Virus record (IMG/VR): IMGVR_UViG_3300042922_000542 | Span: 124,001 to 188,000 of that record | DNA: 64,000 nucleotides | Strand: one strand, 5' to 3' | Part shown: piece by piece, positions 7,568-54,390 of the stretch | How positions within the stretch are numbered: position 1 is the first letter of the stretch | Layout: each line of letters begins with the position of its first letter | Notes under the pieces: generated by a model | The model's input: the letters and a program-made list of their open reading frames with translations, nothing else | What the model was told of the DNA's origin: nothing | Database searches by the model: none | Translations under genes and position numbers: made by a program

Positions 7568-7601
7568 TTTTATTTATTTTTACATATGTTATGTTCAAGT
7601 A

Positions 7602-9629: not shown

Positions 9630-9654
9630 CTTCTTTATTTCATTTATTAATTTT

Positions 9655-9664
9655 ATAATATATC
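9655..9664 (-). promoter_or_regulatory. early-type promoter motif GATATATTAT upstream of polB
   Basis: Recurrent motif about 25 nt upstream of the start. Confidence 0.55.
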
Positions 9665-9692
9665 ATTAATATTAAATATGTAAATTTAATAA

Positions 9693-9722
9693 TATATAGG
9701 AGTCGTTTCGGACTCCTATATA
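9693..9722. terminator. intrinsic terminator after 9736 ORF
   Basis: TATATAGGAGTC-gtttcg-GACTCCTATATA stem, T-tract on minus strand. Confidence 0.75.
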
Positions 9723-9735
9723 ATAAAAAAATATT

Positions 9736-10545
9736 TTATACTTTAGTTTTTAATATTGTGATAACTGCCTGATTGTATGGGCTGGTATTAATTCGATATA
9801 TCTGCTCGTCATCATCAAGTGTACCTGATGTAATAACAGTTGATGTTACGAATTTTAATAATTCCATAATACCACTATTATTAATTACTTGCTTATTAAA
9901 ATGAATTAATGATATCGCATTTTCATTCCCTATAGTGAGAAACGCATGACTATCATCAGGTATTATAATATCTGAATTATTTTCTATCATAGTGACAATT
10001 TTTTTTATTTTTGGTGTGATATTGAGCATGTGCAATATAGTTTGGTCGACGATATATTTTGTATATGATTTATTTAAATAAATTGACTGCCTTTGAAATA
10101 TATCGATCTCATTACTCTCAACGAATAATTGCACTTCAGGATTCCCAATTCCAAATTTATTAGCGATTGTGGATGTTATTACTCTTGACACATTCGGTAA
10201 TATATAAAGATCTGTGATGGCTTTTAGTATCTCAATATCTTCATTATTGAATAATGCAAAATCATCTATATTTGAAAATTCTCTAAATAATTCGTTTTTA
10301 ACTATATCATCAATCAAATTATTAGATAGATATACCATAAATTCTCCATCAGGATCCAATAACATTCTGACTTGTTGTAATTCTGGTATAAATACTTTGT
10401 GCACTGGTTTGTATACTTGTTTAAAATTTTTAATAAATTCTGAGAATATTAATCCAGCCAGTGATGATATAATTGATAATTGAAATAGTTCAACTTGAGC
10501 TTTGTTTTCTTTCAATATTTCTTTAATTCGATTTGAAATAGACAT
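9736..10545 (-). CDS. hypothetical protein
   Basis: 269-aa ORF with AAAGGTGG RBS. Confidence 0.7.
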   Translation of the reverse strand: MSISNRIKEILKENKAQVELFQLSIISSLAGLIFSEFIKNFKQVYKPVHKVFIPELQQVRMLLDPDGEFMVYLSNNLIDDIVKNELFREFSNIDDFALFNNEDIEILKAITDLYILPNVSRVITSTIANKFGIGNPEVQLFVESNEIDIFQRQSIYLNKSYTKYIVDQTILHMLNITPKIKKIVTMIENNSDIIIPDDSHAFLTIGNENAISLIHFNKQVINNSGIMELLKFVTSTVITSGTLDDDEQIYRINTSPYNQAVITILKTKV

Positions 10546-10605
10546 AGTATGTTAACCACCTTTTTAATATAATTTATTAAATATAATTGTAAAGGAGAAA
10601 TATAA

Positions 10606-12042: not shown

Positions 12043-12044
12043 AT

Positions 12045-12054
12045 TATATATTAT
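12045..12054 (+). promoter_or_regulatory. early-type promoter motif TATATATTAT
   Basis: 33 nt upstream of ATG 12087. Confidence 0.55.
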
Positions 12055-12086
12055 TAATATAATAAATATAAAAGGGAGAATAATAT

Positions 12087-12251
12087 ATGAGCGAGTTTGA
12101 TTGGTTTGGTCCAAAGAAAAAATCTAAACCCGTTAATGTTTTTGTCGAGGGTCCTATAACGAAAAAGATTATTAAAAAATTAAAACGTGATAAACCCGGT
12201 CGCACAATTATCATTAATGGAAAAATATATATCGATCCTGATACTGATTAA
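12087..12251 (+). CDS. 54-aa basic protein absent from the ORF track (MSEFDWFGPKKKSKPVNV...YIDPDTD)
   Basis: AAAGGGAG RBS, own promoter motif and downstream terminator. Confidence 0.7.
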   Translation: MSEFDWFGPKKKSKPVNVFVEGPITKKIIKKLKRDKPGRTIIINGKIYIDPDTD

Positions 12252-15500: not shown

Positions 15501-17050
15501 AAGAAACTGTTATCAAAGAATTATTAGCAGTTAACACGGTTGAGGATTATTCAACTCTTAACCCAGCAATCGAAATTGGTAAATCATATGGAATATCAGC
15601 GAGAGGTTATAAAGGTTCTAATACCGATAGATCATATGATGAGGAAAAACGTTCATACGATGAATCATCAATTGGTAAACTAGCGATGTCATCTCCAAAT
15701 GATGCCAATATCGGTATAACTCGTGAGTTAGTTGTTGAGCCTACAATTACAAATGCAAGAGGGTGCCGCGCACCAGTAGAGGATCTCGACGACCTTAAGG
15801 ATGTTAATATATTTAGTCCTGTGGAGCTTTTGACACCCGGTACTGTAAGAATGGATGATCCAATACGTACTGCAATTGCAGGTAAACAAACTCGTCACTT
15901 GGTTCCTGTTGCAAATGCATCTCCTGCGTTAATATCTAATGGATTTGATGAGGCGATTCAATTTCATCTCTCATCGGACTTTGTTGTTAATGCGGAAGAA
16001 GATGGTGAAGTTGTAGAAGTAAATGAAGAAGTTGGTTTCATTATCGTTAAATATAAATCAGGTAATACACAGGCAATAAACATTAATCCTGAAATAGTAA
16101 AAAATGGCGGTGGAGGATTCTATCTATCAAATACTTTAAGAGCGACTGTTAAATTGCACGATAAATTTAAAAAAGATGATGTGTTGGCATATCATGATAA
16201 ATATTTTAAATTCTCAAAGAATAATGGATTGCGTTTTGCTATAGGTCCGCTTGTAAAATGCGCATTTATATCAACATATAATACCTATGAGGATGCTGGT
16301 ATATGTACAGAAAAATTGGCGGATATGATGAAAACATCCATCGTATATAAAGAGGTTGGTACGTTTAAACGAAATTCAAACGTAATTAATATGGTTAATG
16401 TAGGTGATCATGTTAATATTGGAGATTCATTAATTAAATATGATACATCGTTTGATGACACTGAAATTTCAAAACTCATGGCTCATCTGTCGGATGAAAA
16501 TAAAGAATTGATTGAAGAAACCTCCAAGAATGATGTTATAACGCAACATGCGGGTAAAGTTGTTGACATTAAGATATTTACTCTACATGATCCTTCTAAT
16601 CTATCACCAACTTTAGGTGATGTTGTTAAAAAATACTTTGATGTAGGATTATCTAGAAAAGAATTATTAACGAAATATGATTCATCTGAAGGAATTATAA
16701 AAGCTGGTTATCTATTAACAGAAACAATTGAGCCGGTTGTATCTAGATATAATGATATTAAAGGTATAAAGACTGATGTGTTAATAGAATTTTATATTGA
16801 ACATGGTGATGTTGCCGGCATCGGTGATAAAATAGTATTATACGGACCTAATAAGCAGATTATCTCTGAAGTAATTCCAAAAGGATATGAACCATACTCA
16901 GAATTACATCCGGATGAGGAGATATCAGTATTTACAAGTCCGGGTACTATAGCAAGGCGTATGACATCAAGTATTATTCCTATTTCTATGGGGATGAAAA
17001 TCATGGTCGAGCTAAAAAGAAAAATTAAAGATATTATAAAATATAAGTAA
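12566..17050 (+). CDS. rpoB: virion RNAP beta subunit, large N-terminal part (phiKZ gp178-like)
   Basis: GKLAMSSP.DANIGITREL, DDPIRTAIAGKQ.RH.VP, GDKIV.YGPNKQIISEVIP, SPGTIARRM; 1494 aa with a long N-terminal extension. Confidence 0.9.
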   Translation: MIDNITTGIELSNLDYDTYALTQDGSFSEAYKFTSIEFNRIYTSKVRLPDGKSNIIYLLSDTFDKTVDLLNHNSISIPPTYRKVYYPIVKQGTFLNRRYRMNFLKAKVERDAFIKTQTNRKRIAYPSRTISATSTDNLFFITSDLYNVVSPVMKNVSINKLMKTFFNDFIDILQSMTPANQEAKGPEFSNRILIVDADAFRFSGGSLTENKTNLLFLLYLSFLRTRDNSATGADIDIVILSKNLLMKFNPARINPNKFNKFRTALFRIMKTNLDDYTATLTEDEQKELTISSDDIITKNIVDKKVDVYTKYSSPAVRTALASAIDSELRSKHMQSMAREDITKSTQNEISTGKKMTGKDYDNINHSIEYKMSKTVVNDLSRTPKTVKDSQDTRKRDLFKSVIGGGYEPLVSEEEIDMGAVEDDIIGKQDPAELDDYIDNVSDEIDNIILNDKSIAEDIIDEIQTRTIPMGSKRNSPVNGPLDEKLREQQKKVVVRDSTIEEILSRENSAIPVQTDDKSASFKSLNPNVKTITFANFDKTYIEELYSADLVAVFNSLQDKSTPFYITSIDITDASTALDLKETWKVHLKDETGKSHTITVDIPKFYQNKFLWLGGNKKMIMKQNLYNPIVKDTADSVIITTNYNKVTVTRRATKSFAQIENLFSLVKKVDDVEMFIAGDASKINMKYISTLEYDEIGKSLFKFKSGDCELFFNREYINNNINTTETIGNNEFIIGFEGKTPVIIHEDTGKDRNNRTIIEVIYQNLSDEHKAIFDSTKARKQAMYAEGKLLGQFVPVIVTLIVWNGITKTLDAMDIQWQFHKDVKRLPKMNFNMSYIKFEDGILEYESNLFTQLILNGLNKLGPEHLTFESLNDESGYIEYLHSIFGTYTIVTQFRTFYEFLVDPVTKDICRDMFLPQTPEGLMIHSVKLLANNAYINKASDKSYRIRSVEIIPAILYNKIAAQYTKYVTSGRRIPFSLPKETVIKELLAVNTVEDYSTLNPAIEIGKSYGISARGYKGSNTDRSYDEEKRSYDESSIGKLAMSSPNDANIGITRELVVEPTITNARGCRAPVEDLDDLKDVNIFSPVELLTPGTVRMDDPIRTAIAGKQTRHLVPVANASPALISNGFDEAIQFHLSSDFVVNAEEDGEVVEVNEEVGFIIVKYKSGNTQAININPEIVKNGGGGFYLSNTLRATVKLHDKFKKDDVLAYHDKYFKFSKNNGLRFAIGPLVKCAFISTYNTYEDAGICTEKLADMMKTSIVYKEVGTFKRNSNVINMVNVGDHVNIGDSLIKYDTSFDDTEISKLMAHLSDENKELIEETSKNDVITQHAGKVVDIKIFTLHDPSNLSPTLGDVVKKYFDVGLSRKELLTKYDSSEGIIKAGYLLTETIEPVVSRYNDIKGIKTDVLIEFYIEHGDVAGIGDKIVLYGPNKQIISEVIPKGYEPYSELHPDEEISVFTSPGTIARRMTSSIIPISMGMKIMVELKRKIKDIIKYK

Positions 17051-19900: not shown

Positions 19901-20290
19901 TTATATGGATAGTAATATAGTTAATGGATCCCTCTCATCTTTATGAATTTCATTAAGCCTAAAATTATATTCTGTTCGACCTGCCTTAAATTCCTCAAGT
20001 TTTATTTGTGATTTTTCAGCTGCTTCTTTATAACTATTGGCATGTACATAAATAGTCTTCATATGATCGCGGTGATCACAAAATCCATCACAATAGTTAT
20101 GAGTTATTTCGGTAAAGAAAATCATAGGTTGTTCTAATTCCATATCTTCTTCAACTATATAGTACTCAATCGTTCCATGTATTAACCTAACTGGAGAAAT
20201 ACATTCTTTACTTTCAGCCTCGACAAACTTGGTTGATAAGTATAATTTTCTAGATTTATCATGAAATATGTCTATTTTATATCTTGGCAT
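19901..20290 (-). CDS. hypothetical protein
   Basis: 129 aa overlapping the upstream gene end. Confidence 0.65.
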   Translation of the reverse strand: MPRYKIDIFHDKSRKLYLSTKFVEAESKECISPVRLIHGTIEYYIVEEDMELEQPMIFFTEITHNYCDGFCDHRDHMKTIYVHANSYKEAAEKSQIKLEEFKAGRTEYNFRLNEIHKDERDPLTILLSI

Positions 20291-21699
20291 ATTACCACCG
20301 TCCTATCACATTTTTGTTTAGCAACTAGAATTGGAATGTTTAGAATATTTGCTAAAATTATTAGGTCACCATTCATAACATACTCTTTATCATTAATATT
20401 AATATTGCTAAAATATTCACTAAGATCAATAAATGATAATTCATTTATTATTTTATCATTAATATATTCATTTTCATCATTTAGACATCTAGTGCGTTTC
20501 CAATAATTTTTCATTTTATATAATTTATCATCAGTTACGTCTTTTACATTTGGCATATAATCACTCAACTCAAATACCATTGCCGATGCAATGGTATTAA
20601 ATTCAACCTCAGCATACATCCACTTTTCTGCAATATCCGCACCTACAAATTCATCAACGATATTACATTCCAGAATACGCCCGTTTGGTAGCATGTATTT
20701 ATATCTAGTTTTTGTGATTAATGGTTTACTAATAAAGAATTTCAAATATTCATATAACATTTTACCAATAGATATTTCTAACTCTGCTCTTGAAATAGTT
20801 CCATCTGATTTACCTGTTATAAAATACTCAGGTCCGGCGTCAATTGACGTCACCTTTCTAATTCGAATTTCATTATCAAATGATTCCAAATAACCCTGTT
20901 CGATATTACATTTTGATATACATTTTAAATTGTCAGGGAGTGATTCTATCAAATATTTCTTTTCAATTTCTTTGTCAAAAACAGTTATTGGTGTACAATT
21001 ATAGATCATATCTATAGATCCATCAATAATATTATCTGATTTTTCAGGTTGATTTACATTAGATGTAGGGCGCCATGAAGTCACTAGCTTATATATATTG
21101 CCATTATTTTTTACATGAACTGCCGCATCTAAATATTTATCTATCTTTTCAACCCATTCATTGAATCCTAGTTCAGACATTGCATGTAATAATATATTGG
21201 CACTATTCTTACCAAAGTTTCTCATAGCTAATAAATCATATGCACTTAATCTAAGAAGATCTTGAATATATTTGACATGACCACGCATTAAACTGTTACG
21301 TGTCAATGTTGGTAGATTCAAAATGGATATACTGGATCTCATCAATTCATATTGTGTAGGTTGATCAATGAGTTTAGTGATATTACTTAAATGATAATTT
21401 AATAGACGGATTACCTTAGACTTAATTTGGCTAACTCTTGTAGATGTTCTATCAATTATTAAAGCAATTTCATTTGAATTATGTCGATCGTTTCCGTCTA
21501 AACCGTAATAAAGGTTTATTACACGTTGCTGTATTTCTGTTAATTTTTTAATGCCATCCATTAATACTAATGAAAGTTCTTCAGATTTATTATATTTTGA
21601 TAATAAATCTTTCAATGTATTTGGATCTTTTTTGAATATATCTTGTAACAATTTTCTTTCACGTTCATTAACGTTGTCAATACTTATACAATGTCCCAT
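20272..21699 (-). CDS. fusion protein: sigma70 region-4 HTH + RNAP alpha-CTD-like domain + CYTH (triphosphate tunnel) domain
   Basis: LTEIQQRVINLYYGL..NEIA..TRVSQIKSKVIRLL (sigma4); ISILNLPTLTRNSL..IQDLL..LLAMRNFGKNS (alphaCTD); EIEKKYL..IEQGYL..IRIRK..TGK..RAELE..KTRY..AEVEF..DVT (CYTH). Confidence 0.85.
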   Translation of the reverse strand: MGHCISIDNVNERERKLLQDIFKKDPNTLKDLLSKYNKSEELSLVLMDGIKKLTEIQQRVINLYYGLDGNDRHNSNEIALIIDRTSTRVSQIKSKVIRLLNYHLSNITKLIDQPTQYELMRSSISILNLPTLTRNSLMRGHVKYIQDLLRLSAYDLLAMRNFGKNSANILLHAMSELGFNEWVEKIDKYLDAAVHVKNNGNIYKLVTSWRPTSNVNQPEKSDNIIDGSIDMIYNCTPITVFDKEIEKKYLIESLPDNLKCISKCNIEQGYLESFDNEIRIRKVTSIDAGPEYFITGKSDGTISRAELEISIGKMLYEYLKFFISKPLITKTRYKYMLPNGRILECNIVDEFVGADIAEKWMYAEVEFNTIASAMVFELSDYMPNVKDVTDDKLYKMKNYWKRTRCLNDENEYINDKIINELSFIDLSEYFSNININDKEYVMNGDLIILANILNIPILVAKQKCDRTVVICQDIK

Positions 21700-34012: not shown

Positions 34013-36154
34013 ATGTACGTTCTACCACATATACGAACAATACATGACTGTGAGAGGGAGTTTGGGGATGTTATAATCATTTCTCATTATAATACCTATG
34101 AAAAATTTGATGAATTATATTGGAAAGTATATTATGCAATTTGCGCATGTTATGAAATTTCAGAGTGCGTTAAATATAAAATACGTTTCAAATTTTACGA
34201 TTCCGATAGTAAGACCTATGAGCTATCTATGGTTAAATTTCTTTTAAATATAAACGCATGGAGACCACTAATTGAATTATATCAATTGCAAAAATATTAT
34301 CATTATAAATTAGAAGTATTGGATGAAAGCTTCATCATTAACAGAATGATGAGTGATACATTAAGAATAGGATTGGAATCTAAAGTATTGAAGACATTAG
34401 ATGATTATGGTATCTCATTTGAAAGATCATCTGATCTAATAAAGACTGTTATCGAAAGATATCAAGAGATATCGATCGAGTTTTCGTTGTTAGCTCCAGC
34501 CGGAATATTTACTCTTGAGAATTGTTTCCTAAACGATTATATGAATAATGAAAAGATTCGAGAGTTAAATAATACTGTAATATCACAAAATATTCAAACT
34601 GCCGATGTTGAGGAATTATTAAAAGAGAAGTATAATGAGCTTGTCGTAGAGTTAGGTAAAACTAAGAACCCGATATGGTATGTTAGTAAAGCAGGTAATC
34701 ACATCAAAGCTAAACAGGTACAAGAATTATTTATTTCGTACGGTCAGGTTCCGAATGTTGATGGTAATGTAATTCCTTATACGATGGAAGGTAATGGATT
34801 CAGTACTGGGTTTAATAGCCCATCTGCATATTATGTTGCCGCAACTGGTGCTAGATTATCGGCTATCATGAATAAAACTAAAATGGGTGAAGCGGGTTAT
34901 CTATCTCGTAATTTAATTTTATTGAGTAGAACAATGCATCTCTCTACAACTACATTTGATTGTGGTACTAAACACATGCTTGAATTATTTGTATCAAGTT
35001 CAACTATGTTGAGGAGATTGGAGAATCGTTGGTTTTGTGAATATTTGGGGGATCCATTACAATGCATTCATTATGAAACCCATAAACATTTAATTGGTAA
35101 GAAAATTTATGTGAGGTCTTTGTTAACATGTGCAGGTGGTGATGAGGTATGTCATGTATGTTACGGACGAGATAGTCACCTTGTTGCAAATATGCCAGGT
35201 ATGGCAATATTTAATACGGAAGTTTATTCAGAACCAGTATCGCAAAATATATTATCCACTAAACATTTATTGTTTACAGCCGCCAATAAATTGACATTCA
35301 GCGATTCGTTTGATAAATATTTTAAATTTAATGCAGGGGATATTTATTTGAAGGATCAAGATGAATGGAATAATGAGTTACCATTTGAATATTTAAGCAT
35401 AAGAATTGAAGAAAGCAATGTGCTATCCGTTAATGAACAGGATATAATTGAATATAGTACATTCGGTAATAATATAGAATCCCCATTCTTTATATATAAT
35501 AAAAAGACCGGCGAATATGATAAAATAGAAATAATAAATGCTGAATCCATGTTTATAGATGCGACATCTATGAAATTATTCAAAACAGTTATTGATAAGA
35601 AGCATGCGAATAGTAAGTTTTATGAACTTCCGCTACATACAATAGCTACTGAATTAGAGGGTCGTTTAATGTCAGTTGATATTAAAAATAATGGATTAAC
35701 CGATAACCTCTATATGATAATGGACTTATTAAATAAAAATGCATCTAAATATGATGATTATAATCAACTTGCACAATACTTCTTTGAAATGTTAATTAAT
35801 GTTGGAATCCGTTGCAGAAATATTCAAGCAGAAATTATATTAAATCGATTGATACGCGATAATAATGATATATATGCTAGACCTGATTTTTCTAAATTCA
35901 AAGCGCCTGAATATAAAATATTGACATTGAATCAAGCATTGATAAATACCAAAGCACCTACAATAGGTTTATCATATCAAGAAATCAAACGTCAATTACT
36001 CAGCGATGATCTTTATGCCAGTAAGAATGGAGCATCATATTTAGATCCTATGTATGCGACATCAATCAGTACTGATCGTTTAAAAGAAATACATAATAAG
36101 TTAAGAAATAAATTAAAGGAGAAAAAGGAAAATGAGCAATCAGAACATAAATAA
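34013..36154 (+). CDS. rpoC: non-virion RNAP beta'-C subunit (AR9 gp154 / phiKZ gp74-like)
   Basis: KQVQELFISYG..P, GARLSAIMNK..GEAGYLSR (bridge helix), DCG, LTC..VCHVCYG Zn site, EPVSQNILSTKHLL (trigger loop). Confidence 0.92.
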   Translation: MYVLPHIRTIHDCEREFGDVIIISHYNTYEKFDELYWKVYYAICACYEISECVKYKIRFKFYDSDSKTYELSMVKFLLNINAWRPLIELYQLQKYYHYKLEVLDESFIINRMMSDTLRIGLESKVLKTLDDYGISFERSSDLIKTVIERYQEISIEFSLLAPAGIFTLENCFLNDYMNNEKIRELNNTVISQNIQTADVEELLKEKYNELVVELGKTKNPIWYVSKAGNHIKAKQVQELFISYGQVPNVDGNVIPYTMEGNGFSTGFNSPSAYYVAATGARLSAIMNKTKMGEAGYLSRNLILLSRTMHLSTTTFDCGTKHMLELFVSSSTMLRRLENRWFCEYLGDPLQCIHYETHKHLIGKKIYVRSLLTCAGGDEVCHVCYGRDSHLVANMPGMAIFNTEVYSEPVSQNILSTKHLLFTAANKLTFSDSFDKYFKFNAGDIYLKDQDEWNNELPFEYLSIRIEESNVLSVNEQDIIEYSTFGNNIESPFFIYNKKTGEYDKIEIINAESMFIDATSMKLFKTVIDKKHANSKFYELPLHTIATELEGRLMSVDIKNNGLTDNLYMIMDLLNKNASKYDDYNQLAQYFFEMLINVGIRCRNIQAEIILNRLIRDNNDIYARPDFSKFKAPEYKILTLNQALINTKAPTIGLSYQEIKRQLLSDDLYASKNGASYLDPMYATSISTDRLKEIHNKLRNKLKEKKENEQSEHK

Positions 36155-36617
36155 TTCAAATATATCAATATTGAATCAACATGCTTTTGAAGAGGCTGCA
36201 GTAGAAATTAAGCAATTGCAAGATAAGATCGATGACAAATTAAAGGAAAAATGCCCAGATGAATTAGAATCTCATGAGAATTTATTATTTAAAGAAATCA
36301 GCTCTACTATAATTAAAATACTCACAGACACTTCTACTCAAGAGGCATTCAGAGAGTTGCAGAATAAAATAGGAACTGATATTTCGAAGGAATTAGTTGA
36401 ACTGATCTCAACTGTAACAACATTTGCAACATATAATGCAATTGCATTTTATGATATGACTGTTAAAGAACAAATTTCAGAAAATTTTACAGAGTGGGGA
36501 AAAACTATTATGAAACATGATAGTGATATAAATGTCATGGCTGCTAAAATTGGAGATATCGAAAAGAAATCAATTGTTTCTAAATTGCAAAATATTGTTG
36601 ATAATGATGTAATATAG
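36132..36617 (+). CDS. hypothetical helical protein
   Basis: 161 aa overlapping the beta'-C stop. Confidence 0.65.
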   Translation: MSNQNINNSNISILNQHAFEEAAVEIKQLQDKIDDKLKEKCPDELESHENLLFKEISSTIIKILTDTSTQEAFRELQNKIGTDISKELVELISTVTTFATYNAIAFYDMTVKEQISENFTEWGKTIMKHDSDINVMAAKIGDIEKKSIVSKLQNIVDNDVI

Positions 36618-36647
36618 ATACATATTATACAAAAGCAATTAGTTTAA

Positions 36648-36684
36648 ATATGAGAGGGGATGGGCGGCCATCCTCCTTCATATT
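36648..36684 (+). terminator. intrinsic terminator
   Basis: AATATGA.GAGGGGATGG-gcgg-CCATCCTCCT.TCATATT then T-rich run. Confidence 0.7.
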
Positions 36685-36698
36685 CTTATTTTTTTATT

Positions 36699-36708
36699 TA
36701 TATATTAT
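36699..36708 (+). promoter_or_regulatory. early-type promoter motif TATATATTAT upstream of ppk1
   Basis: Recurrent motif immediately after a terminator. Confidence 0.6.
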
Positions 36709-36753
36709 AATTATATAATAATTGAATAACAAAATAAAGTGAGGGTTTATGAT

Positions 36754-38571
36754 ATGTCAAAAATATCTGCAATTAAAAGTCTTATTATGTTTAATCAAAG
36801 AGTCTTATCACTAGGCGAAGTAATAGATGGTAAAACATATACAATGAATGAATTAAAAAAGACATTATCATTCAATCAAATATTCATTAATAATATGAAT
36901 GAAATTTTCAAAAATCAGAAGAAGTTCACTGAGTGCATTGATGAGTATAATGCCGACCTAAAGAAAGTTCATTTAAATTTATATAACATTATTAACAAAA
37001 TAATGGAGATTGATAAATCGATCATGATAGAGTTGGATGACAGATATCAGTTCGAATGTAGATTTGCAATATTGGATTTTATTAAGAATGGACTGATGAT
37101 TGATGTTATTAATAAAACTGAATTAGAAACATACCATTTTGATGAAGGTTTAATCTATTATATAATATCCGCGGGCAGTAGTTATATCATTTATCATATG
37201 GATTCTAAATGCAAATTATATCAATGCTTAATATCATATAAATTTAATGATTATATTAGATATTGGAAAACTGATGCAGCGATGTTATCATATCTTAAAA
37301 ATAATCACAAAGATGATAGTAATGATATATATGGAATTGTAATGAAAGTTACGAAATCATCAGACAGCCATGATCTGGTTAAGGTCGACATGTATGGAGA
37401 AACCGATGATATGCAGTCAATATATAATGATATGGTGACACATTCAAATTGGCATGATAAGTTCATTATAAAAAATCAATTCATGTATATGAGTGATATT
37501 GAACAAATCATTACATCGTCTAAGCTATATCAAAATATACCCGCCCATACTAATGTATTTGCATCAGATAATGATAAAGAATCGTTCTTACTATCAGATA
37601 TATTTGATAAAGATATATTAGTTGAATACCCTAATGATTCATTTGATTCATATTTACGATTATTACATCTTGCATCAATCGATAATAGGGTTGAATCGAT
37701 ATCCGTAACATTATATAGAATAGGTAATAATCCTATTATATATTATATTCTTAGAGACGCTGTAAGGAGAGGTGTTCAAGTGCATGTAAATTTAGAACTT
37801 AGAGCATCTGAAGAAAAGATTAATAAATTCTGGGCAAGTGAGATGAAGGCAGTTGGTATAGATGTGGCGCATTATGCGGATGGATATTTAAAGGTCCATT
37901 GCAAATTGACATTAATAAAATTCAAAGATAATAAAATGATAGCCCAGATCGGTACGGGTAATTATCATTCTCAAACCACATCGCAATATACAGATTTTTC
38001 ACTCATGACTACAGATAAAAAAATGACGTCACAAATATCAGATCTATTTGATGTTATATTTAATAGAGCGACAAAAGTTAAATTTAATAAAGACTTATTG
38101 GTCACTCAATATAATATGAGGGATACTCTTAAAGAGCTAATATTGAATCAAACAAATCTAGGTCCTAAAGGGTTAATTCAAATTAAATGCAATGCTCTTG
38201 ATGACGACGAAATGATAAAATATTTGGATTCAGCTGCATTAGCTGGATGTAAGATGCAATTAATAATAAGAGGTGTATGCACATGGATTCCACCTGAAAA
38301 TACACTTAATAAAAATGTGACAATCAAATCTATAGTATGGGATAAATTGGAACATTCCAGGGTATACTGTTTTGGAAATATTAACCCTAATGTATATTTA
38401 GGATCGCTAGACTTAATAACACGAAAATTAGATAATCGAATCGAAACATTGGTTCGAATAACTAATAAACATACACTAGTTGAGTTATGCAATTATATGA
38501 CTAGATATAATAATTTTAGCGGGGCTTGGAGTATGATTTATGATGGTGGAAATATTAAATATGTAAAATAA
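36754..38571 (+). CDS. ppk1: polyphosphate kinase 1
   Basis: MFNQRVL, F..IF.NNMNEIF, DILVEYP.DSF, TLYR, ELRA, LKVHCKL (phospho-His site), IGTGNY, YTDFSL, IKCNAL, IIRGVC, LEHSRVY, SLDLITRKLDNRIE; GAGGG RBS supports ATG 36754. Confidence 0.92.
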   Translation: MSKISAIKSLIMFNQRVLSLGEVIDGKTYTMNELKKTLSFNQIFINNMNEIFKNQKKFTECIDEYNADLKKVHLNLYNIINKIMEIDKSIMIELDDRYQFECRFAILDFIKNGLMIDVINKTELETYHFDEGLIYYIISAGSSYIIYHMDSKCKLYQCLISYKFNDYIRYWKTDAAMLSYLKNNHKDDSNDIYGIVMKVTKSSDSHDLVKVDMYGETDDMQSIYNDMVTHSNWHDKFIIKNQFMYMSDIEQIITSSKLYQNIPAHTNVFASDNDKESFLLSDIFDKDILVEYPNDSFDSYLRLLHLASIDNRVESISVTLYRIGNNPIIYYILRDAVRRGVQVHVNLELRASEEKINKFWASEMKAVGIDVAHYADGYLKVHCKLTLIKFKDNKMIAQIGTGNYHSQTTSQYTDFSLMTTDKKMTSQISDLFDVIFNRATKVKFNKDLLVTQYNMRDTLKELILNQTNLGPKGLIQIKCNALDDDEMIKYLDSAALAGCKMQLIIRGVCTWIPPENTLNKNVTIKSIVWDKLEHSRVYCFGNINPNVYLGSLDLITRKLDNRIETLVRITNKHTLVELCNYMTRYNNFSGAWSMIYDGGNIKYVK

Positions 38572-38578
38572 CTGAGAG

Positions 38579-39304
38579 GTGACGTTAATGTATACTCCTA
38601 ATATGAGTATTTGGTTAAATCCTAATTTAGAATATCTATTCAATACAGAGATAATCGAATATGATATGAAGGAAGCAGGATTTAGCTTAATAAAGCAATT
38701 TCATTTATTATCTGACGATGAAATTCATAAATTAAATATGATTGAAAAGTCTGAAAGGACGATAGCTATTGGCAAACTGCAACGTGATAAGATTTTATCA
38801 AGTTCTGCATTATCTGATAAATTCACAGAAATGCGAGCTGCATTTATCGAAGCTAATAAAATAACAGATAATGATATTATATCTGTTAAAAAAGATGCTA
38901 TATTTACTATAGGTAAATGTAAAAGGCAGAAATTTGGCGGTATTGAATTTGTAGAAAAGCATAATTATTCATCATATATTAGATTTGTGAATAATTCTAA
39001 TATTGAAATATTTTATAATGATGGGGATGGTTTAGAAATAAAAGGTATTGGTGATATAGGAATTAATAGACACAGATTGTACTTAATCCCATTCCTTGAA
39101 AAAATAATTAAATATATTGAGTTAAAGAATCCATCGGTAAAACGACAGATTAGAACATTTATAGATGATTATAAGGCTATGAAATTGGATGAGGGGTACT
39201 ATATTGAATTCAATAATAAGAGTGCATCAGTAGATCCGATGTACAATTATCAGAAATTATTAATACCCCTAGTTCAATTAGTTGTGGAGGAACTTAACAA
39301 ATGA
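38579..39304 (+). CDS. minimal palm-domain DNA-polymerase-like protein
   Basis: IIEYDMKEAGFS (motif A-like Asp), ISVKKDAIF (motif C-like Asp), LEIKGIG (PolB KG-like); only 241 aa. Confidence 0.55.
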   Translation: MTLMYTPNMSIWLNPNLEYLFNTEIIEYDMKEAGFSLIKQFHLLSDDEIHKLNMIEKSERTIAIGKLQRDKILSSSALSDKFTEMRAAFIEANKITDNDIISVKKDAIFTIGKCKRQKFGGIEFVEKHNYSSYIRFVNNSNIEIFYNDGDGLEIKGIGDIGINRHRLYLIPFLEKIIKYIELKNPSVKRQIRTFIDDYKAMKLDEGYYIEFNNKSASVDPMYNYQKLLIPLVQLVVEELNK

Positions 39305-41448: not shown

Positions 41449-43410
41449 ATGGTAAACATTATTAGAAATCAAGGTACAGTGAAAGTTATTCAGCAGAATA
41501 ACAATACCCAACATGAAGACAATTTCGTATTACAGACACCTATTAAAGAAACTTTAGCTGTGCCTGTTACAAAATTTGTATTTGAGGGTGACATTGATAG
41601 TTCAATCGAATCGCAATCATATAATAATATTTCACAAAAATCAAATACTAACATCAATGCAAATGATAGATATGATGATTTCGTTTTAGCTAAACCTGGT
41701 AATGAACAATTAGTAGATGGGGTTACTAAGAAAACTATGAATTCCCAAGAACCTCATAAAATCAATAGATTTGATAATCCTGAAAGTATACCATCCATTG
41801 TAGATGTGACTAGATCGATATCAAAGATAGCTAACATGATTAGGGAATCATTAAAACGAAATGACGTTTATGGTAAAATAACTTATGACAAAATGAAAGA
41901 ATCTGAATTTTACTATAAATTGAGCAATCCTATCTGGAAAAGTTTATTGCAAATATGCAATATTGAACAACTACCAGGTGAGAATCAATTTAATATCCCA
42001 AAGGTAGATATGAATACACCTTATCTAGAAACTTGGAGATTTTTCGATAGGATGTATCATGATACAAGGGTTAGTTTCGACAAAGATCCTATTATAGCAA
42101 TCACTAATTATAAGAATATATTCCAGGTTAATGGCGGAATCACTAGTAAATTAATACCAGTACTATTTTCGAAAATAGGGGAAAAATTAAATGGTATATC
42201 ACCATCAGATCTAAATATTATAGTGAATAACATTGGTGGTGTATGGTGTTATCGTGACCCATCTTATATCGAATCCATTGGAGTCGACAGTCCAATGCCA
42301 CCACGCATGACACTGTTTGATCCATTTGCACATAATGATACTGATGAAGAATTCTCTATCGGTAATGAAGTGCAGGTGCATATTCCAATAGCACAGATGG
42401 ATAAAGTGAATAAAAATAATAATATATATCAAACTGATGATAATGATGATTACGAAGATGATTGCGATGATGAATCTGATTATGATGAGGATTGTGATGA
42501 TTATGACGACTGCTGCGATGAATATGAAGATGAGGATCATGATGATGAGGTATTAACTATCGATATACAGAATGATACAGATGTTAATGAAGCCATTATT
42601 TCTATATCAGCATGGAATGGTACTACAACGGCATTATATGAAGTATTAGAAGTTAAACCAGAAACTGAAGAATCATTAGATTGGTCTTGGTTACGTCATT
42701 TTATACCAAATGCTGTAATTGTTACAGAAGAACCAGATGCATATTTAGAATACAATGAAATGTTGGATTGTATTAGATTTGCACAGTTGGCAAAATCTAA
42801 AGATGTAACTGAAGAGCCGAATGATAGTGCTACGATAATAGGTTTATACTATATTGATGAAGAAGTTGAAAATATGGAAGATAACTTATTGCACACTATT
42901 GGTAATATCGTTGAGCAAAATATGTCGGTTGCACCAAATTTAAGCCATCTAGTAAGAACCCTTCAGATGGATAGATTAATAGTTGATGAAATATCACTTT
43001 TAAAATGCATTGGTCAAATTGATGATGATGATAATGGAAATTATGCTAATCCAGATGCCGATGAATGTGAAGACGAAGATGAAGAATATGAATCAACATT
43101 AGCATTTGCAGCTTCATTAATATCGGGCAATAATGACATGGAAGCACCAACGCCTACAGAAATTATTGAAGAAGATGATTATGAGGATGATAATCAAGAA
43201 GTGATGGAAGAACCAGATGCAGAAGCCGAGGTAAATGAAGAGATATATGAGGTATATGAAGAAGAGGAAGAAATAGTAGAGTCAGATACTTCTGATAATT
43301 GTGAAAATACAATCGGCGATTACATCCGTAATAAATATGGTGATGCGGATGGTCTAGTATTACAACCAATCGTAAAAGGTCGAAATAGTAAATATCAAGA
43401 CGTTGAGTAA
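41449..43410 (+). CDS. large, highly acidic protein
   Basis: 653 aa with DDYEDDCDDESDYDEDCDD and EEDDYEDD..EEEEE tracts; GGAGG RBS. Confidence 0.8.
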   Translation: MVNIIRNQGTVKVIQQNNNTQHEDNFVLQTPIKETLAVPVTKFVFEGDIDSSIESQSYNNISQKSNTNINANDRYDDFVLAKPGNEQLVDGVTKKTMNSQEPHKINRFDNPESIPSIVDVTRSISKIANMIRESLKRNDVYGKITYDKMKESEFYYKLSNPIWKSLLQICNIEQLPGENQFNIPKVDMNTPYLETWRFFDRMYHDTRVSFDKDPIIAITNYKNIFQVNGGITSKLIPVLFSKIGEKLNGISPSDLNIIVNNIGGVWCYRDPSYIESIGVDSPMPPRMTLFDPFAHNDTDEEFSIGNEVQVHIPIAQMDKVNKNNNIYQTDDNDDYEDDCDDESDYDEDCDDYDDCCDEYEDEDHDDEVLTIDIQNDTDVNEAIISISAWNGTTTALYEVLEVKPETEESLDWSWLRHFIPNAVIVTEEPDAYLEYNEMLDCIRFAQLAKSKDVTEEPNDSATIIGLYYIDEEVENMEDNLLHTIGNIVEQNMSVAPNLSHLVRTLQMDRLIVDEISLLKCIGQIDDDDNGNYANPDADECEDEDEEYESTLAFAASLISGNNDMEAPTPTEIIEEDDYEDDNQEVMEEPDAEAEVNEEIYEVYEEEEEIVESDTSDNCENTIGDYIRNKYGDADGLVLQPIVKGRNSKYQDVE

Positions 43411-47221: not shown

Positions 47222-48085
47222 ATGACAGGAAATTTATCAACTCTTTGTTATATAAGCGAGCAAACATCTTTCGCTGAAGATTACAAAGATTTTGGATATA
47301 AAGTACATGATCGTGGCAACCGATTCTTTTTAACATTCGATGCTACATTACAATCATTCGGTATAAAAAATCGTAATAAGAGAGTATATGAATCGGCTAA
47401 TATTTTAAATAGGATTGAACAAGATGATTTTATACAATCTATGCTAAAACAGCAATCATGGATAGGCGAGATCGATCATCCAGGATCAACAATTGAAGGA
47501 CAAGATTTAACTCAGAACCGTATTGGAAATCCTGATCCAAAAATGTCTTCTCATTTTATCAGAAAACCTTGGCTAGTCGGAAATTTATTGAAAGCTCCGA
47601 TTCAAACGGATTCTTCAAATGAGCATGGAATGAATATGGCAATCAAGATTGTCGATGGAAAGATAGTGCCAGCATTTAGTGCAAGGGTATTTGGTGAATT
47701 AATTAATAAATTGGGTGTTCCTACTGTTATCGTTAAAAGATTAATAACATATGATTGGGTAATGTACCCATCTCACCCAGAAGCACTCGCAGATATTAAA
47801 CCTGGTATATTAACTGAATCTACCAATATGATTGAGGGTGCTATGAATGGAACGATAATATTCATAAAAGAATTGGCGAAAATGGCCGCAAACAATTCTA
47901 AAGAAACTGAATGGTTGTGCGAATCATTCGGATTGACGATTGATAATATCATTGGTATTAATGATACTGGCGATTCTATTATTATTCAAGAAAATAAGAA
48001 TATATACGCCCAGCCGATATCTGATAAATTCATACGTGAAAAGACCAAAAATCAATTATCTGACTTTTTAGGAAGGAGAGTTTAA
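47222..48085 (+). CDS. prohead maturation protease, T4 gp21 / phiKZ gp175 type
   Basis: LQSF..KNRNKRVY, WIGEIDHP (His), PAFSAR (Ser), ITYDWV.YPS. Confidence 0.88.
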   Translation: MTGNLSTLCYISEQTSFAEDYKDFGYKVHDRGNRFFLTFDATLQSFGIKNRNKRVYESANILNRIEQDDFIQSMLKQQSWIGEIDHPGSTIEGQDLTQNRIGNPDPKMSSHFIRKPWLVGNLLKAPIQTDSSNEHGMNMAIKIVDGKIVPAFSARVFGELINKLGVPTVIVKRLITYDWVMYPSHPEALADIKPGILTESTNMIEGAMNGTIIFIKELAKMAANNSKETEWLCESFGLTIDNIIGINDTGDSIIIQENKNIYAQPISDKFIREKTKNQLSDFLGRRV

Positions 48086-53358: not shown

Positions 53359-54390
53359 ATGTCAATATATAGTTCAGTAGGTGGCGTTAATAAAGAAATT
53401 ATAAAACTATATGGTCTTTCGGGTGGGGTTAACCGAGAAATTAAAAACTTATTCGGTGTAGATGGCGGTGCTAATAGAGAAATATTTGGCTCAATTTTAC
53501 CAGGTACTATATGGACTGAGCGTAGTGTGGTATTTGGAACTTTCATATATTGTTATTATGCTAACGGATTATGGGTAGCTTGTAGCGATATGGGTTTACA
53601 TTATTCAATCGATGGTATCGAATGGTATATGAGTAATATAATAACTGGAATTTTTAATAATTGCAATTATGGTAATAATACATGGGTAGCTTGTGGTATT
53701 AATAATGGTCTATATTATTCAACTGATGGTACAGAATGGACTCAGAGTAATATAACAATTGGAAGTTTTAAATATTGTTATTATAGTAATAATACATGGA
53801 TTGCTTGTAGTGATAATAGTGGGTTACGTTATTCAACTGATGGTATAACATGGACTCTGAGTACAGGTGGAAATTTTTATCATTGTTATTATGGTAATAA
53901 TAAATGGGTAGCTGCTGGAGCTAGTGGGTTACGTTATTCAACTGATGGTATAACATGGACTATGAGTAATATTGAATCAACTGTATTTTATCATTGTTAT
54001 TATGGTAATAATATATGGGTAACTTGTAATAATAGTAATTATGGTTTATGGTATTCAACTGATGGTATAACATGGTCTCAAAGTAATATAACGACTGGAA
54101 TTTTTAATAATTGCAATTATGGTAATAATACATGGGTAGCTTGTGGTAATAGTGGTCTATATTATTCAACTGATGGTATAACATGGAATCTGAGTACAGG
54201 TGGAAATTTTAAATATTGTTATTATGCTAACAGATTATGGGTTGCATGTAGTGCTAATGGTTTATGGTATTCAACTGATGGTATAACATGGTCTCAAAGT
54301 AATATAACGACTGGAATTTTTAATAATTGCAATTATGGTAATAATACATGGGTAGCTTGTGGTAATAACAATTTATATTATTCAAAATAA
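53359..54390 (+). CDS. 8-bladed beta-propeller (BNR-like repeat) putative receptor-binding protein
   Basis: 8 x C.Y.N..WVAC...GL.YSTDG..W; N-terminal GGVN.EI repeats. Confidence 0.75.
   Translation: MSIYSSVGGVNKEIIKLYGLSGGVNREIKNLFGVDGGANREIFGSILPGTIWTERSVVFGTFIYCYYANGLWVACSDMGLHYSIDGIEWYMSNIITGIFNNCNYGNNTWVACGINNGLYYSTDGTEWTQSNITIGSFKYCYYSNNTWIACSDNSGLRYSTDGITWTLSTGGNFYHCYYGNNKWVAAGASGLRYSTDGITWTMSNIESTVFYHCYYGNNIWVTCNNSNYGLWYSTDGITWSQSNITTGIFNNCNYGNNTWVACGNSGLYYSTDGITWNLSTGGNFKYCYYANRLWVACSANGLWYSTDGITWSQSNITTGIFNNCNYGNNTWVACGNNNLYYSK
54041..54367 (+). repeat. two identical 111-bp direct repeats (54041-54151 and 54257-54367); 55-bp third copy at 53644-53698
   Basis: Base-by-base comparison. 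Confidence 0.85.

What the first reader, a model, noticed from the sequence alone, without database searches (positions are those of the whole stretch)
36754..38571. Phage-encoded full-length polyphosphate kinase 1 under an early promoter
Seen: all PPK1 hallmark blocks in order, including the autophosphorylated His (KVHCK), the second PLD-like His (LEHSR), R in IIRG and the N-terminal FNQRVL. The head domain is divergent, HHPY becomes VEYP, and RFDEE is shortened. The gene has phage-like composition and a phage-type promoter. Known: PPK1 reversibly converts ATP to polyP, and polyP buffers energy and phosphate, activates Lon and organises nucleoid condensates. To my knowledge PPK1 is rarely described in phages. 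Inference: the phage either mines host polyP for NTP supply or makes polyP to remodel the cell.
Basis: partly seen in the sequence, partly recalled or inferred. Interest (0 to 1): 0.8.

Follow-up and report, generated by a model that had tools for sequence, protein, structure and literature searches.

The report
Reduced polyphosphate kinase of jumbo phages
A giant bacterial virus carries its own slimmed-down, strongly diverged version of the bacterial enzyme that makes polyphosphate, kept at the same genome position behind the same early-type promoter in many related uncultured giant phages, which suggests that these viruses manipulate the cell's phosphate and energy store soon after infection.

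Summary
Window 36754-38571 (+) is an intact 605-aa ORF. Profile comparison and predicted structure place it in the PPK1 family along its whole length (N, head, C1, C2), and the phospho-histidine, the second histidine and most ATP ligands are invariant.

It is not an ordinary PPK1:
- It fails NCBI's PPK1 equivalog cut-off (254 vs 465.85 bits) and both Pfam N/middle-domain models.
- Its head domain and C-terminus are shortened.
- It lacks the ATP-phosphate ligand Arg405.

It belongs to a deep, phage-only clade: about 50 clusters at 50% identity, and none in 185,579 species-representative bacterial and archaeal genomes. In 14 related jumbo-phage contigs (distant AR9/PBS1 relatives) the gene sits directly after an RNA-polymerase beta' gene. 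Each copy is preceded by a terminator and an invariant TATATATT[A/C]T element that matches the AR9 early-promoter consensus.

Published M. tuberculosis PPK1 mutants suggest the clade's changes spare polyP synthesis and weaken NTP regeneration. My best reading is therefore an early-expressed polyP synthase. No activity or transcript data exist.

PPK1 is rare in cultured phages but common on metagenomic jumbo-phage contigs. Verdict: new variant of a known kind, moderately interesting.

The parts
36647..36684 (+). Intrinsic terminator hairpin ending the upstream gene (36132-36617), followed by a U-rich run up to about 36695
   Evidence: RNA fold -20.9 kcal/mol, z -3.85 against shuffles. The terminator scan finds 36656-36675. 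A GC-rich hairpin plus T-run stands at the same place in the orthologous loci.
36696..36708 (+). Promoter element ATTTATATATTAT. By analogy with AR9 the transcript would start about 36715 (6 nt downstream, an A), giving a 5' UTR of about 39 nt.
   Evidence: Sequence. It matches 11 of 13 positions of the AR9 virion-RNAP early consensus AAATATATATTAT-(6N)-G (PMC5312081). The core TATATATT[A/C]T is invariant in all 14 orthologous upstream regions, although the proteins are only 33-43% identical. The same motif lies 18-68 nt upstream of four other genes in the window, including the DNA polymerase, and 520 nt upstream of a fifth. The start site itself is inferred, not observed.
36741..36745 (+). 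Ribosome-binding site GAGGG, 8 nt before the ATG
   Evidence: Sequence.
36754..38571 (+). Coding sequence of the reduced PPK1-family protein (605 aa plus stop)
   Evidence: ORF list; identical product P0001 in the protein collection; Pfam, PDB, HHalign and structure matches.
36754..37038 (+). N domain (about aa 1-95): three long helices with FNQRVL and NNMNE (N47 corresponds to the E. coli adenine ligand N45). About 24 residues shorter than in E. coli.
   Evidence: Alignment and residue map; HHalign covers it; helices 6-19, 31-54 and 58-86 in both models.
37039..37578 (+). Reduced head domain plus linker (about aa 96-275). It is the least conserved part, and an approximately 23-residue segment holding the canonical R254 is missing.
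   Evidence: Within-clade identity is 29%, and only 4 of 180 columns are at least 90% conserved. Deletions are seen. The domain is absent from the 450-470 aa clade members. The structure still aligns with the PPK1 head.
37579..38073 (+). C1 domain (about aa 276-440). It holds R322, S352 (in place of R405), K380-V-H382-C-K384 (the phospho-histidine, codon 37897-37899), Q398 (in place of H454), N403, Y412 and D414.
   Evidence: Pfam PP_kinase_C_1 residues 280-438, 1.2e-38; residue map; invariant columns in 94 clade sequences.
38074..38568 (+). C2 domain (about aa 441-605). It holds R506, the clade motif W529-D-K-L-E-H534-S-R536 (second histidine, codon 38353-38355), S551, D553, K558 (in place of N617), R562 and E564. 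The C-terminal tail with Q674 is absent.
   Evidence: Pfam PP_kinase_C residues 448-594, 1.2e-32.
34013..36154 (+). Context: RNA polymerase beta'-like subunit gene, the conserved upstream anchor of the locus
   Evidence: PHROG 3015, 2e-53. Its best cultured match is the AR9/PBS1 beta' subunit at 27%. It is 66-74% identical in most orthologous loci (60% in L004).
38579..39304 (+). Context: homologue of AR9 g239 (phrog_21037), the conserved downstream neighbour
   Evidence: PHROG 21037, 4e-30; 50-57% identical in the orthologous loci. In AR9 and Staphylococcus phage SA1 the homologue follows a guanylate kinase gene; in AR9 this is an early operon with annotated early promoters.

Best explanation
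The gene encodes a catalytically competent but reduced member of the PPK1 family. It belongs to a clade found only in phages. It is transcribed as its own unit from an AR9-type early promoter, presumably read by the injected virion RNA polymerase, so the enzyme would be made soon after infection.

Proposed mechanism: ATP binds between the N domain (N47) and C1/C2 (Y412, R322, R506, R536, R562). His382, oriented by Glu564, takes the gamma-phosphate. His534, oriented by Asp414, assists. The phosphate is then passed to the end of a growing polyphosphate chain.

The clade has lost Arg405 and carries Gln at the His454 position. In M. tuberculosis PPK1 these changes leave polyP synthesis near wild type but cut NTP synthesis from polyP. 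PPK1 enzymes in general favour synthesis. I therefore propose that the phage enzyme works mainly in the forward direction, converting host ATP into polyP early in infection, as a phosphate and energy store or as a way to remodel the host cell.

Shown: the gene, its family, its conserved residues, its conservation and synteny in phages, and the conserved promoter element. Inferred: activity, direction, timing and physiological purpose.
For: Family and architecture:
- HHalign of 94 clade sequences against 34 canonical PPK1 gives one alignment over 562 columns (query 9-585, template 25-670), probability 100%, E 3e-91.
- The AlphaFold model (pLDDT 92.6, pTM 0.89) aligns over residues 1-605 with P. 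gingivalis and E. coli PPK1 at Z 42 (577-581 residues). The next folds (PLD3, F13) cover only the C-terminal half at Z 27.
- A second model from a clade-only alignment has the same secondary-structure elements, apart from one short helix, at pLDDT 92.7.

Catalytic residues:
- The counterparts of E. coli N45, E48, R375, K433, H435, K437, N459, Y468, D470, R564, H592, R594, R621 and E623 are invariant or nearly so in 94 clade sequences that are only 33-47% identical to the window protein.
- The roles of H435/E623 and H592/D470 are described in PMC3163519.

Selection and residence in phages:
- The clade is monophyletic (SH-aLRT 100).
- It comprises about 50 clusters at 50% identity.
- It is absent from 185,579 species genomes.
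- It sits in the same gene order in 14 loci.
- dN is well below dS; the closest pair has dN 0.23 and dS 1.8.

Early promoter.

Direction:
- In M. tuberculosis PPK1, H510Q (E. coli H454Q) keeps 84% of polyP-synthesis efficiency and 61% of ATP-synthesis efficiency.
- R461A (E. coli R405A) is among the mutants that abolish only NTP synthesis (PMC3215733).
- PPK1s preferentially synthesise polyP, whereas PPK2s consume it (PMC8776046).

Against: - There is no biochemical or expression evidence. No RNA run that holds this DNA was listed.
- The protein fails the curated PPK1 equivalog threshold (254 vs 465.85 bits) and the Pfam N and middle-domain models.
- Several residues that are 85-100% conserved in canonical PPK1 are changed or deleted: R53, R254, S380, R405-F406-D407, P507, G587-R588, N617, and Q674 with the C-terminal tail. 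From memory, and not verified here, S380, P507 and Q674 were reported as essential in E. coli PPK.
- The head domain mediates dimerisation in E. coli, and only the dimer of the M. tuberculosis enzyme is active. Here the head is minimal, and some clade members lack it.
- The authors of the M. tuberculosis study note that some of their mutants behave differently from the E. coli counterparts, so transferring the direction argument to this protein is uncertain.
- The gene evolves faster than its neighbours: 33-43% identity against 66-74% for the RNAP gene.
- One relative lacks it at this locus.
- In cultured relatives the downstream neighbour's homologue follows a guanylate kinase. That hints at a nucleotide-phosphorylation role rather than polyP storage.
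Confidence: 0.5

Rival explanations
1. The enzyme runs mainly in reverse. It uses the host's polyP granules as phosphate donor to turn (d)NDPs into (d)NTPs (the nucleoside-diphosphate-kinase activity of PPK1), feeding the phage's own RNA polymerases and DNA replication early in infection.
For: - PPK1 from M. tuberculosis makes nearly all NTPs and dNTPs from polyP, and ATP synthesis is kinetically far faster than polyP synthesis (kcat/Km 5743 vs 34.7 mM^-1 s^-1; discussion).
- The gene is early-type and sits among transcription and replication genes.
- In AR9 and Staphylococcus phage SA1 the homologue of the downstream neighbour follows a guanylate kinase, so here PPK occupies a 'nucleotide kinase slot'.
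- No guanylate kinase homologue was found in the window or the orthologous loci.
Against: - The clade has lost R405. In M. tuberculosis PPK1 the equivalent mutation selectively destroys NTP synthesis, and Gln at the H454 position lowers it.
- PPK2, not PPK1, is the family specialised for polyP-driven nucleotide phosphorylation.
- This role depends on hosts holding polyP at the time of infection.
- The positional analogy rests on two or three cultured phages.
Confidence: 0.2
2. The protein keeps the phospho-histidine chemistry but has been retargeted. The phosphate is passed to, or taken from, a substrate other than long-chain polyP, such as a nucleotide (for example ppppG-type products), a nucleic-acid end or a protein. 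The reduced head and the rebuilt surroundings of the active site would reflect this change.
For: - Nine or more positions that are 85-100% conserved in canonical PPK1 are systematically replaced in the clade. The replacements include clade-invariant new residues: W529-D-K before the second His, K558 for N617, and C499.
- The head domain is dispensable in some members.
- The protein fails the equivalog threshold.
- It evolves faster than its neighbours.
- The C1/C2 fold is the versatile PLD fold shared with nucleases and lipid enzymes.
Against: - All ATP-binding and His-activating residues, and the N-domain adenine ligand, are kept. That is not expected for a nuclease- or lipase-like PLD enzyme.
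- Several of the replacements only shift a basic residue by one position: R588 to K531, and R616/N617 to K558.
- No alternative substrate is suggested by any neighbouring gene.
Confidence: 0.17
3. The protein is catalytically dead, or only a polyP/nucleotide-binding or structural component such as a partner of the phage RNA polymerase. It would then be a decaying remnant of a captured PPK1.
For: The divergence is fast, the head domain and C-terminus are reduced, and a relative lacks the gene at this locus. The gene lies next to RNA polymerase genes.
Against: Thirty-five columns are invariant across 94 sequences, and they include every residue of the catalytic His network. The ORFs are intact in all loci. 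dN is well below dS. The gene has its own conserved promoter.
Confidence: 0.06
4. The gene is bacterial: an assembly chimera, or a recently captured host auxiliary gene.
For: PPK1 is overwhelmingly a bacterial enzyme. Many 'phage' PPK hits in GenBank phage records are short unannotated faecal contigs or MAG-like records.
Against: - The same gene order recurs in independent contigs from different samples.
- Composition and codon usage match the phage.
- A second assembly of the run covers the stretch without a break, though it may come from the same sample.
- No clade member is found in 185,579 species genomes. The best bacterial matches are 30-38% identical over the C-terminal half only.
- A phage promoter lies upstream.
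Confidence: 0.01

Closest known systems
Bacterial polyphosphate kinase 1 (E. coli Ppk, PDB 1XDO/1XDP; P. gingivalis 2O8R; Pfam PF13089-PF02503-PF17941-PF13090; TIGR03705)
   Same: The domain order N-H-C1-C2 and the fold are the same (Z 42 over about 580 residues; HHalign E 3e-91). The phospho-histidine sits in a K-x-H-x-K motif, as in E. coli. The second histidine and its Asp/Glu partners, and most ATP ligands, are kept.
   Different: - Only 24-27% identical overall.
- About 80 residues shorter, through deletions in the N domain, head, linker and C-terminus.
- R405 becomes S, H454 becomes Q, S380 becomes P, P507 is variable, G587-R588 becomes W-D, N617 becomes K, and R254 and Q674 are missing.
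- It fails the TIGR03705 cut-off and both N-terminal Pfam models.
- It is found only on phage contigs.
Canonical PPK1 genes of other large phages: Vibrio phages vB_VcorM_GR7B/GR11A (annotated 'polyphosphate kinase') and a clade of about 34 IMG/VR contigs of 200-290 kb
   Same: These are also PPK1-family genes carried by jumbo-sized phage genomes.
   Different: They are 650-730 aa with all four Pfam domains and pass the PPK1 equivalog cut-off. They form separate branches of the tree: the GR7B enzyme is about 40% identical to bacterial PPK1. Their gene neighbourhoods are unrelated. They are therefore independent acquisitions, not the same clade.
Virus-encoded ppk1/ppk2 'auxiliary metabolic genes' reported in metagenome surveys (PMC13188868; Li et al. 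2025, Water Res 268:122678, cited there)
   Same: Viral contigs carrying polyphosphate kinase genes, interpreted as boosting polyP accumulation.
   Different: Those reports list host-like genes found by annotation pipelines. The present clade is phage-only, structurally reduced, syntenic next to RNA polymerase genes and driven by a phage promoter. Two jumbo-phage overviews do not mention polyphosphate at all.
AR9/PBS1 early (virion RNA polymerase) promoters, consensus AAATATATATTAT-(6N)-G
   Same: ATTTATATATTAT lies 45 nt upstream of the start codon, directly after a terminator. Its core is invariant across 14 orthologous loci. The window's RNAP subunits are most similar to those of AR9/PBS1, Staphylococcus S6-like phages, Listeria LPJP1 and Yersinia phiR1-37.
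   Different: Two of the 13 positions differ. The base at the predicted start is mostly A, not G. Recognition by a virion RNAP and early timing are not tested. The RNAP subunits are only 27-31% identical to AR9's.

Membership tests
PPK1 (polyphosphate kinase 1) | Four-domain architecture N - head - C1 - C2 | tested here: met
   VIA-align aligns model residues 1-605 with 2o8r_A (Z 42.2, 577 aligned) and 1xdo_A residues 5-662 (Z 41.7, 581 aligned). HHalign covers columns 9-585 against canonical 25-670. The head is shortened and is missing in some clade members.
PPK1 (polyphosphate kinase 1) | Autophosphorylated histidine (E. coli H435) with its orienting glutamate (E623) | tested here: met
   H382 in KVHCK and E564 are invariant in 94 clade sequences. 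Their roles are described in PMC3163519 and PMC3215733.
PPK1 (polyphosphate kinase 1) | Second PLD-type histidine (H592) with its orienting aspartate (D470) | tested here: met
   H534 in LEHSR and D414 are invariant.
PPK1 (polyphosphate kinase 1) | Full set of conserved ATP ligands (N45, R375, R405, N459, Y468, R564, R594, R621) | tested here: not met
   Seven of the eight are invariant. R405 is S352 here, and S/T/F/Y in most of the clade, within a motif that is one residue shorter and holds no conserved basic residue. The basal intermediates P0154 and P0156 still have R405.
PPK1 (polyphosphate kinase 1) | Curated sequence-model thresholds | tested here: not met
   TIGR03705 (PPK1 equivalog) scores 254.2 bits against a cut-off of 465.85, and all NF0039xx models score below their cut-offs. 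A canonical viral PPK1 (L045) scores 593 and E. coli 853. The Pfam C1 and C2 models pass (132.7 and 113.2 bits), while PP_kinase_N and PP_kinase (middle) are not hit.
PPK1 (polyphosphate kinase 1) | Reversible ATP/polyP phosphotransfer activity | not testable with these tools
   Needs the purified protein or complementation.
PPK1 (polyphosphate kinase 1) | Active as a dimer/tetramer through head-domain contacts | not tested
   Only a monomer was modelled. The head is reduced, with 4 of 180 columns conserved, and is absent in the 450-470 aa variants.
Host-derived auxiliary metabolic gene | Close homologues in bacterial genomes (recent capture) | tested here: not met
   No clade member is found in 185,579 species genomes. 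Bacterial PPK1 match at 30-38% identity over the C-terminal half only, and scores drop from 295 to 179 bits between the clade and bacteria. The clade is monophyletic.
AR9-type early (virion RNAP) promoter | Extended AT-rich consensus AAATATATATTAT followed 6 nt later by the start purine | tested here: met
   ATTTATATATTAT-AATTAT-A lies at 36696-36715, an 11 of 13 match. The core is invariant in 14 orthologous loci. The motif recurs upstream of other genes.
AR9-type early (virion RNAP) promoter | Transcription start and early timing observed | not testable with these tools
   No RNA run was listed.

The most novel reading that the evidence does not exclude
A lineage of uncultured AR9-like jumbo phages has kept, over a very long time, its own minimal PPK1, with some members reduced to N+C1+C2 and no head domain. 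The active site has been retuned (R405 lost, Gln for His454, new W-D-K and Lys558 motifs) into an essentially one-way polyP synthase, or into a phosphotransferase with a new acceptor. The phage would fire it from an early virion-RNAP promoter as a takeover tool: draining host ATP and phosphate into polyP, or building polyP condensates that reorganise the infected cell.
Probability: 0.25. Interest if true: 0.8.

Novelty: new variant of a known kind. Interest (0 to 1): 0.58.

Why it matters
PolyP is a central and still poorly understood regulator of bacterial energy, phosphate, stress and nucleoid state. How lytic phages deal with it is almost unexplored.

This finding matters for three reasons:
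- A phage-only PPK1 lineage, conserved next to the phage transcription genes and driven by an early promoter, would make polyP manipulation part of the core takeover programme of a whole group of jumbo phages. It would not be an occasional borrowed metabolic gene.
- The clade is a natural deletion series: short head, no head, no C-terminal tail, no R405. It could show which parts of PPK1 are needed for synthesis, for reversal and for oligomerisation.
- It offers compact PPK1 variants for biotechnology.

The question is directly testable with recombinant protein.

Tried and rejected
- Near-identical DNA in GenBank phages: none, so no annotated close relative exists.
- tRNA and Rfam scans of the window: nothing. 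The stretches without long ORFs are filled with small ORFs, so there is no sign of an alternative genetic code.
- RNA evidence: only one DNA run, a soil metagenome that is probably the source sample, holds the stretch, and no RNA run was listed. Laying its contigs showed only an unbroken 35-kb contig with no differences, which is not independent support.
- The sigma-70 promoter scan is uninformative in this AT-rich DNA: 74 hits found against 70 expected.
- An AR9-type late promoter (AACA-N6-TA/G) upstream of the gene: no conserved match.
- dN/dS: synonymous sites are saturated in all pairs, so it shows only that dN is well below dS.
- The primary E. coli PPK structure paper and Li et al. 2007 are not held. 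No paper was found for the 2026 ATP- and polyP-bound PPK1 structures. Residue roles therefore come from PMC3163519 and PMC3215733. The statements about S380, P507 and Q674 being essential rest on my memory only.
- A single-protein scan with the RNAP beta' gene found only four loci, too few to measure how universal the PPK gene is.
- Host chimera and recent host capture were considered and rejected (see rival explanations).
- Guanylate kinase elsewhere in the window or the loci: not found.
Full report
**What is there**

The window is part of a jumbo phage genome.
- It carries several split multisubunit RNA polymerase beta/beta' genes (12566-17050, 34013-36154, 61078-63396, 1166-2449), a DNA polymerase (7602-9629), a phiKZ/T4-type prohead protease (47222-48085) and virion and tail proteins. 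Most other ORFs have no known family.
- It is IMG/VR contig UViG_3300042922_000542 of 246,147 bp.
- GC is about 30% throughout.
- The closest cultured relatives of its RNAP subunits are the uracil-DNA jumbo phages AR9/PBS1, Staphylococcus S6-like phages, Listeria LPJP1 and Yersinia phiR1-37, at only 27-31% identity.

The finding's ORF is intact. An ATG at 36754 lies 8 nt after GAGGG, and the stop is at 38569-38571, giving 605 aa.

**Checking the observation**

- Pfam recognises the two catalytic domains strongly: PP_kinase_C_1 at 1e-38 and PP_kinase_C at 1e-32.
- Pfam does not recognise the N or middle (head) domains, even when the N-terminal half is scanned alone at E<=10.
- The protein is nevertheless full length. 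A profile of 94 clade members aligns with a profile of 34 canonical PPK1 in one piece over 562 columns, including the N and head domains (probability 100%, E 3e-91).
- An AlphaFold model (pLDDT 92.6) aligns over residues 1-605 with the P. gingivalis and E. coli PPK1 crystal structures at Z about 42. The next-best folds, PLD3 and poxvirus F13, cover only the C-terminal half.
- A model built from the clade alone, without any canonical sequence, has the same secondary-structure elements, apart from one short helix.

**How it differs from PPK1**

- The protein scores 254 bits on NCBI's PPK1 equivalog model, against a cut-off of 465.85. A canonical viral PPK1 scores 593 and E. coli 853.
- It is about 80 residues shorter than E. 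coli PPK, through deletions in the N domain, the head, the linker and the C-terminus.
- I compared 42 clade sequences with 96 canonical ones. Positions that are 85-100% conserved in canonical PPK1 but replaced in the clade are R53, R254 (deleted), S380 (to P), R405-F406-D407 (to S-G-gap), P507, V557 (to C), G587-R588 (to W-D) and N617 (to K in all).
- H454 is Q in every one of the 15 clade members mapped, and at least 90% conserved across all 94. The tail with Q674 is missing.
- The catalytic network is untouched. The counterparts of N45, E48, R375, K433, H435, K437, N459, Y468, D470, R564, H592, R594, R621 and E623 are invariant or nearly so across 94 sequences that are only 33-47% identical to the window protein.
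- Within the clade the C1 and C2 domains are 52-55% identical, the N domain 38% and the head 29%. Only 4 of 180 head columns are conserved.
- Several clade members of 450-470 aa have lost the head altogether.

**Where the clade lives**

- The word-indexed search found about 85 full-length relatives at 34-47% identity, on contigs of up to 300 kb. There is then a score gap (295 to 179 bits) to bacterial PPK1, which match only the C-terminal half.
- The exhaustive search of representatives gives about 50 clusters at 50% identity before canonical PPK1 begins.
- A scan of 185,579 species-representative bacterial and archaeal genomes with clade-specific motifs found no clade member.
- In a tree of 140 sequences the clade, together with a few longer intermediates that also sit on phage-like contigs, is monophyletic with SH-aLRT 100. 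This was a quick search with a long stem branch, so I name no donor lineage.
- In 14 loci from independent samples the gene order is the same: RNAP beta' subunit, a small variable protein, the PPK-like gene, a homologue of AR9 g239, and three further conserved genes.
- The neighbours are much better conserved than the PPK-like gene: RNAP beta' at 66-74% and the others at 50-69%, against 33-43%.
- One relative with a 70%-identical RNAP gene lacks the whole downstream block.
- The gene is therefore old, phage-resident, fast-evolving and widely but not universally kept.
- A host chimera is excluded by this synteny and by composition and codon usage.

**Promoter**

- The upstream gene ends in a strong hairpin (36647-36684, -20.9 kcal/mol, z -3.85) followed by a U-run.
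- ATTTATATATTAT follows directly at 36696-36708.
- The early promoters of AR9, read by the injected virion RNA polymerase, have the consensus AAATATATATTAT-(6N)-G (PMC5312081).
- Thirteen of the 14 orthologous loci show a visible hairpin and T-run, and all 14 show the core TATATATT[A/C]T at the same place. This holds across genomes whose GC ranges from 26% to 42% and whose proteins have diverged to 33-43% identity.
- The motif also lies 18-68 nt upstream of the DNA polymerase gene and three other genes in the window, and 520 nt upstream of a fifth.
- No conserved AR9-type late promoter is seen.
No transcript data could be found.

**How it most likely works**

The conserved residues imply ordinary PPK1 chemistry. 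ATP is bound by N47, Y412 and the arginines. His382 is phosphorylated. The phosphate is then transferred to a polyP chain.

For the direction I rely on published mutagenesis of M. tuberculosis PPK1.
- Gln at the H454-equivalent position leaves polyP synthesis at 84% and ATP synthesis at 61% of wild-type efficiency.
- Ala at the R405-equivalent position is among the changes that abolish only NTP synthesis (PMC3215733).
- PPK1s in general prefer synthesis and PPK2s prefer consumption (PMC8776046).

I therefore favour an early-expressed polyP synthase that turns host ATP into polyP (confidence 0.5). Its purpose is inference: a phosphate or energy reserve, Lon activation, nucleoid or condensate remodelling, or ATP drain. 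[quoted passage not shown]

**Rivals**

- Reverse operation as a polyP-driven NDP kinase (0.2). This is helped by the observation that in AR9 and Staphylococcus phage SA1 the g239 homologue follows a guanylate kinase; in AR9 this is an early operon. It is weakened by the loss of R405.
- A retargeted phosphotransferase (0.17), suggested by the many clade-specific replacements and the dispensable head.
- A dead or structural protein (0.06), argued against by 35 invariant columns that include the catalytic network.
- Bacterial contamination or recent capture (0.01).

**Comparison with what is known**

- PPK1 is rare in cultured phages. In 50,697 GenBank phage records only Vibrio phages GR7B and GR11A carry a credible one, and it is a canonical enzyme about 40% identical to bacterial PPK1.
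- The BFVD library of viral structures holds no full-length PPK1.
- Two jumbo-phage overviews do not mention polyphosphate.
- In IMG/VR, however, a second and separate clade of about 34 canonical four-domain PPK1 sits on viral contigs of 200-290 kb, in unrelated neighbourhoods.
- Viral ppk1/ppk2 have been reported as auxiliary genes in environmental surveys (PMC13188868).
- The presence of PPK1 in large phages is thus not new in itself. What I could not find described is this phage-only, reduced, active-site-modified clade with its fixed position and conserved early promoter.

**Verdict**

The finding is a new variant of a known kind, with interest of about 0.58. The decisive work is biochemical: forward and reverse kinetics, the H382A and S352R mutants, the headless variants and complementation. 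It is straightforward to do.

Noticed in passing
L020-L066 (IMG/VR viral contigs, many of 200-290 kb): A second, separate clade of about 34 canonical four-domain PPK1 genes (650-730 aa, passing the PPK1 equivalog cut-off) sits on huge viral contigs with low GC. The neighbouring genes are unrelated to those in the window, and the clade is monophyletic in the tree.
   Followed up: partly
L014:5989-7401 (= L015), and P0065, P0066, P0072, P0081, P0082, P0130, P0134, P0146: These are 'headless' members of the window's clade, 450-470 aa long. The N domain is joined almost directly to C1, with nearly the whole head domain deleted and the catalytic residues intact.
   Followed up: partly
L124 (IMGVR_UViG_3300035498_000877, 289 kb), 7100-12088: This relative has a 70%-identical RNAP beta' gene and the small downstream gene, but no PPK-like gene and none of the following conserved block. 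Small ORFs stand there instead.
   Followed up: partly
window 38579-39304; L126 (AR9 g237-g239), L127 (Staphylococcus phage SA1), L129 (BpSp): The homologue of the window's downstream neighbour (AR9 g239, phrog_21037) lies just after a guanylate kinase gene in AR9 and SA1 (annotated early promoters in AR9), with RNase H and dCMP deaminase nearby. In the window's clade the PPK-like gene occupies that slot.
   Followed up: partly
window 9663(-), 9697(-), 12046(+), 27441(-), 29313(-), 40493(+): Further intergenic copies of the AR9-early-like motif (T)TATATATTAT lie in the right orientation 18-68 nt upstream of gene starts: the DNA polymerase at 9629, and the genes at 27408, 29295 and 40545. One more lies 520 nt upstream of the large RNAP beta gene.
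   Followed up: partly
window 20272-21699 (-): A 474-aa protein matches both Sigma70_r4 (2e-07) and the RNA polymerase alpha C-terminal domain (9e-09). This is an unusual combination in a phage that has its own multisubunit RNA polymerases.
   Followed up: no
window 41449-43410 (+): A 653-aa protein has long, extremely acidic D/E-rich stretches and Cys-Asp repeats. It has no family match and only patchy conservation in relatives.
   Followed up: no
window 53359-54390 (+): The codon usage of this 343-aa ORF correlates much less with the pooled + strand genes (r = 0.70) than that of any other gene tested (0.88-0.97).
   Followed up: no
L002 1561-2991 (-); unnamed 292-kb JGI contig of P0025: A related phage has a topoisomerase IV/gyrase A-like gene interrupted by an intein. 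Another relative carries RtcB (RNA ligase) and RF-1-domain genes a few kb upstream of the PPK locus.
   Followed up: no
P0064 (NCBI protein, 423 aa, contig of 12.7 kb): One clade member is filed in NCBI as 'MAG: phospholipase D-like domain-containing protein, partial [Ruminococcus flavefaciens]'. It is probably a phage contig binned with a bacterium, which makes it a weak hint at a host for that relative.
   Followed up: no
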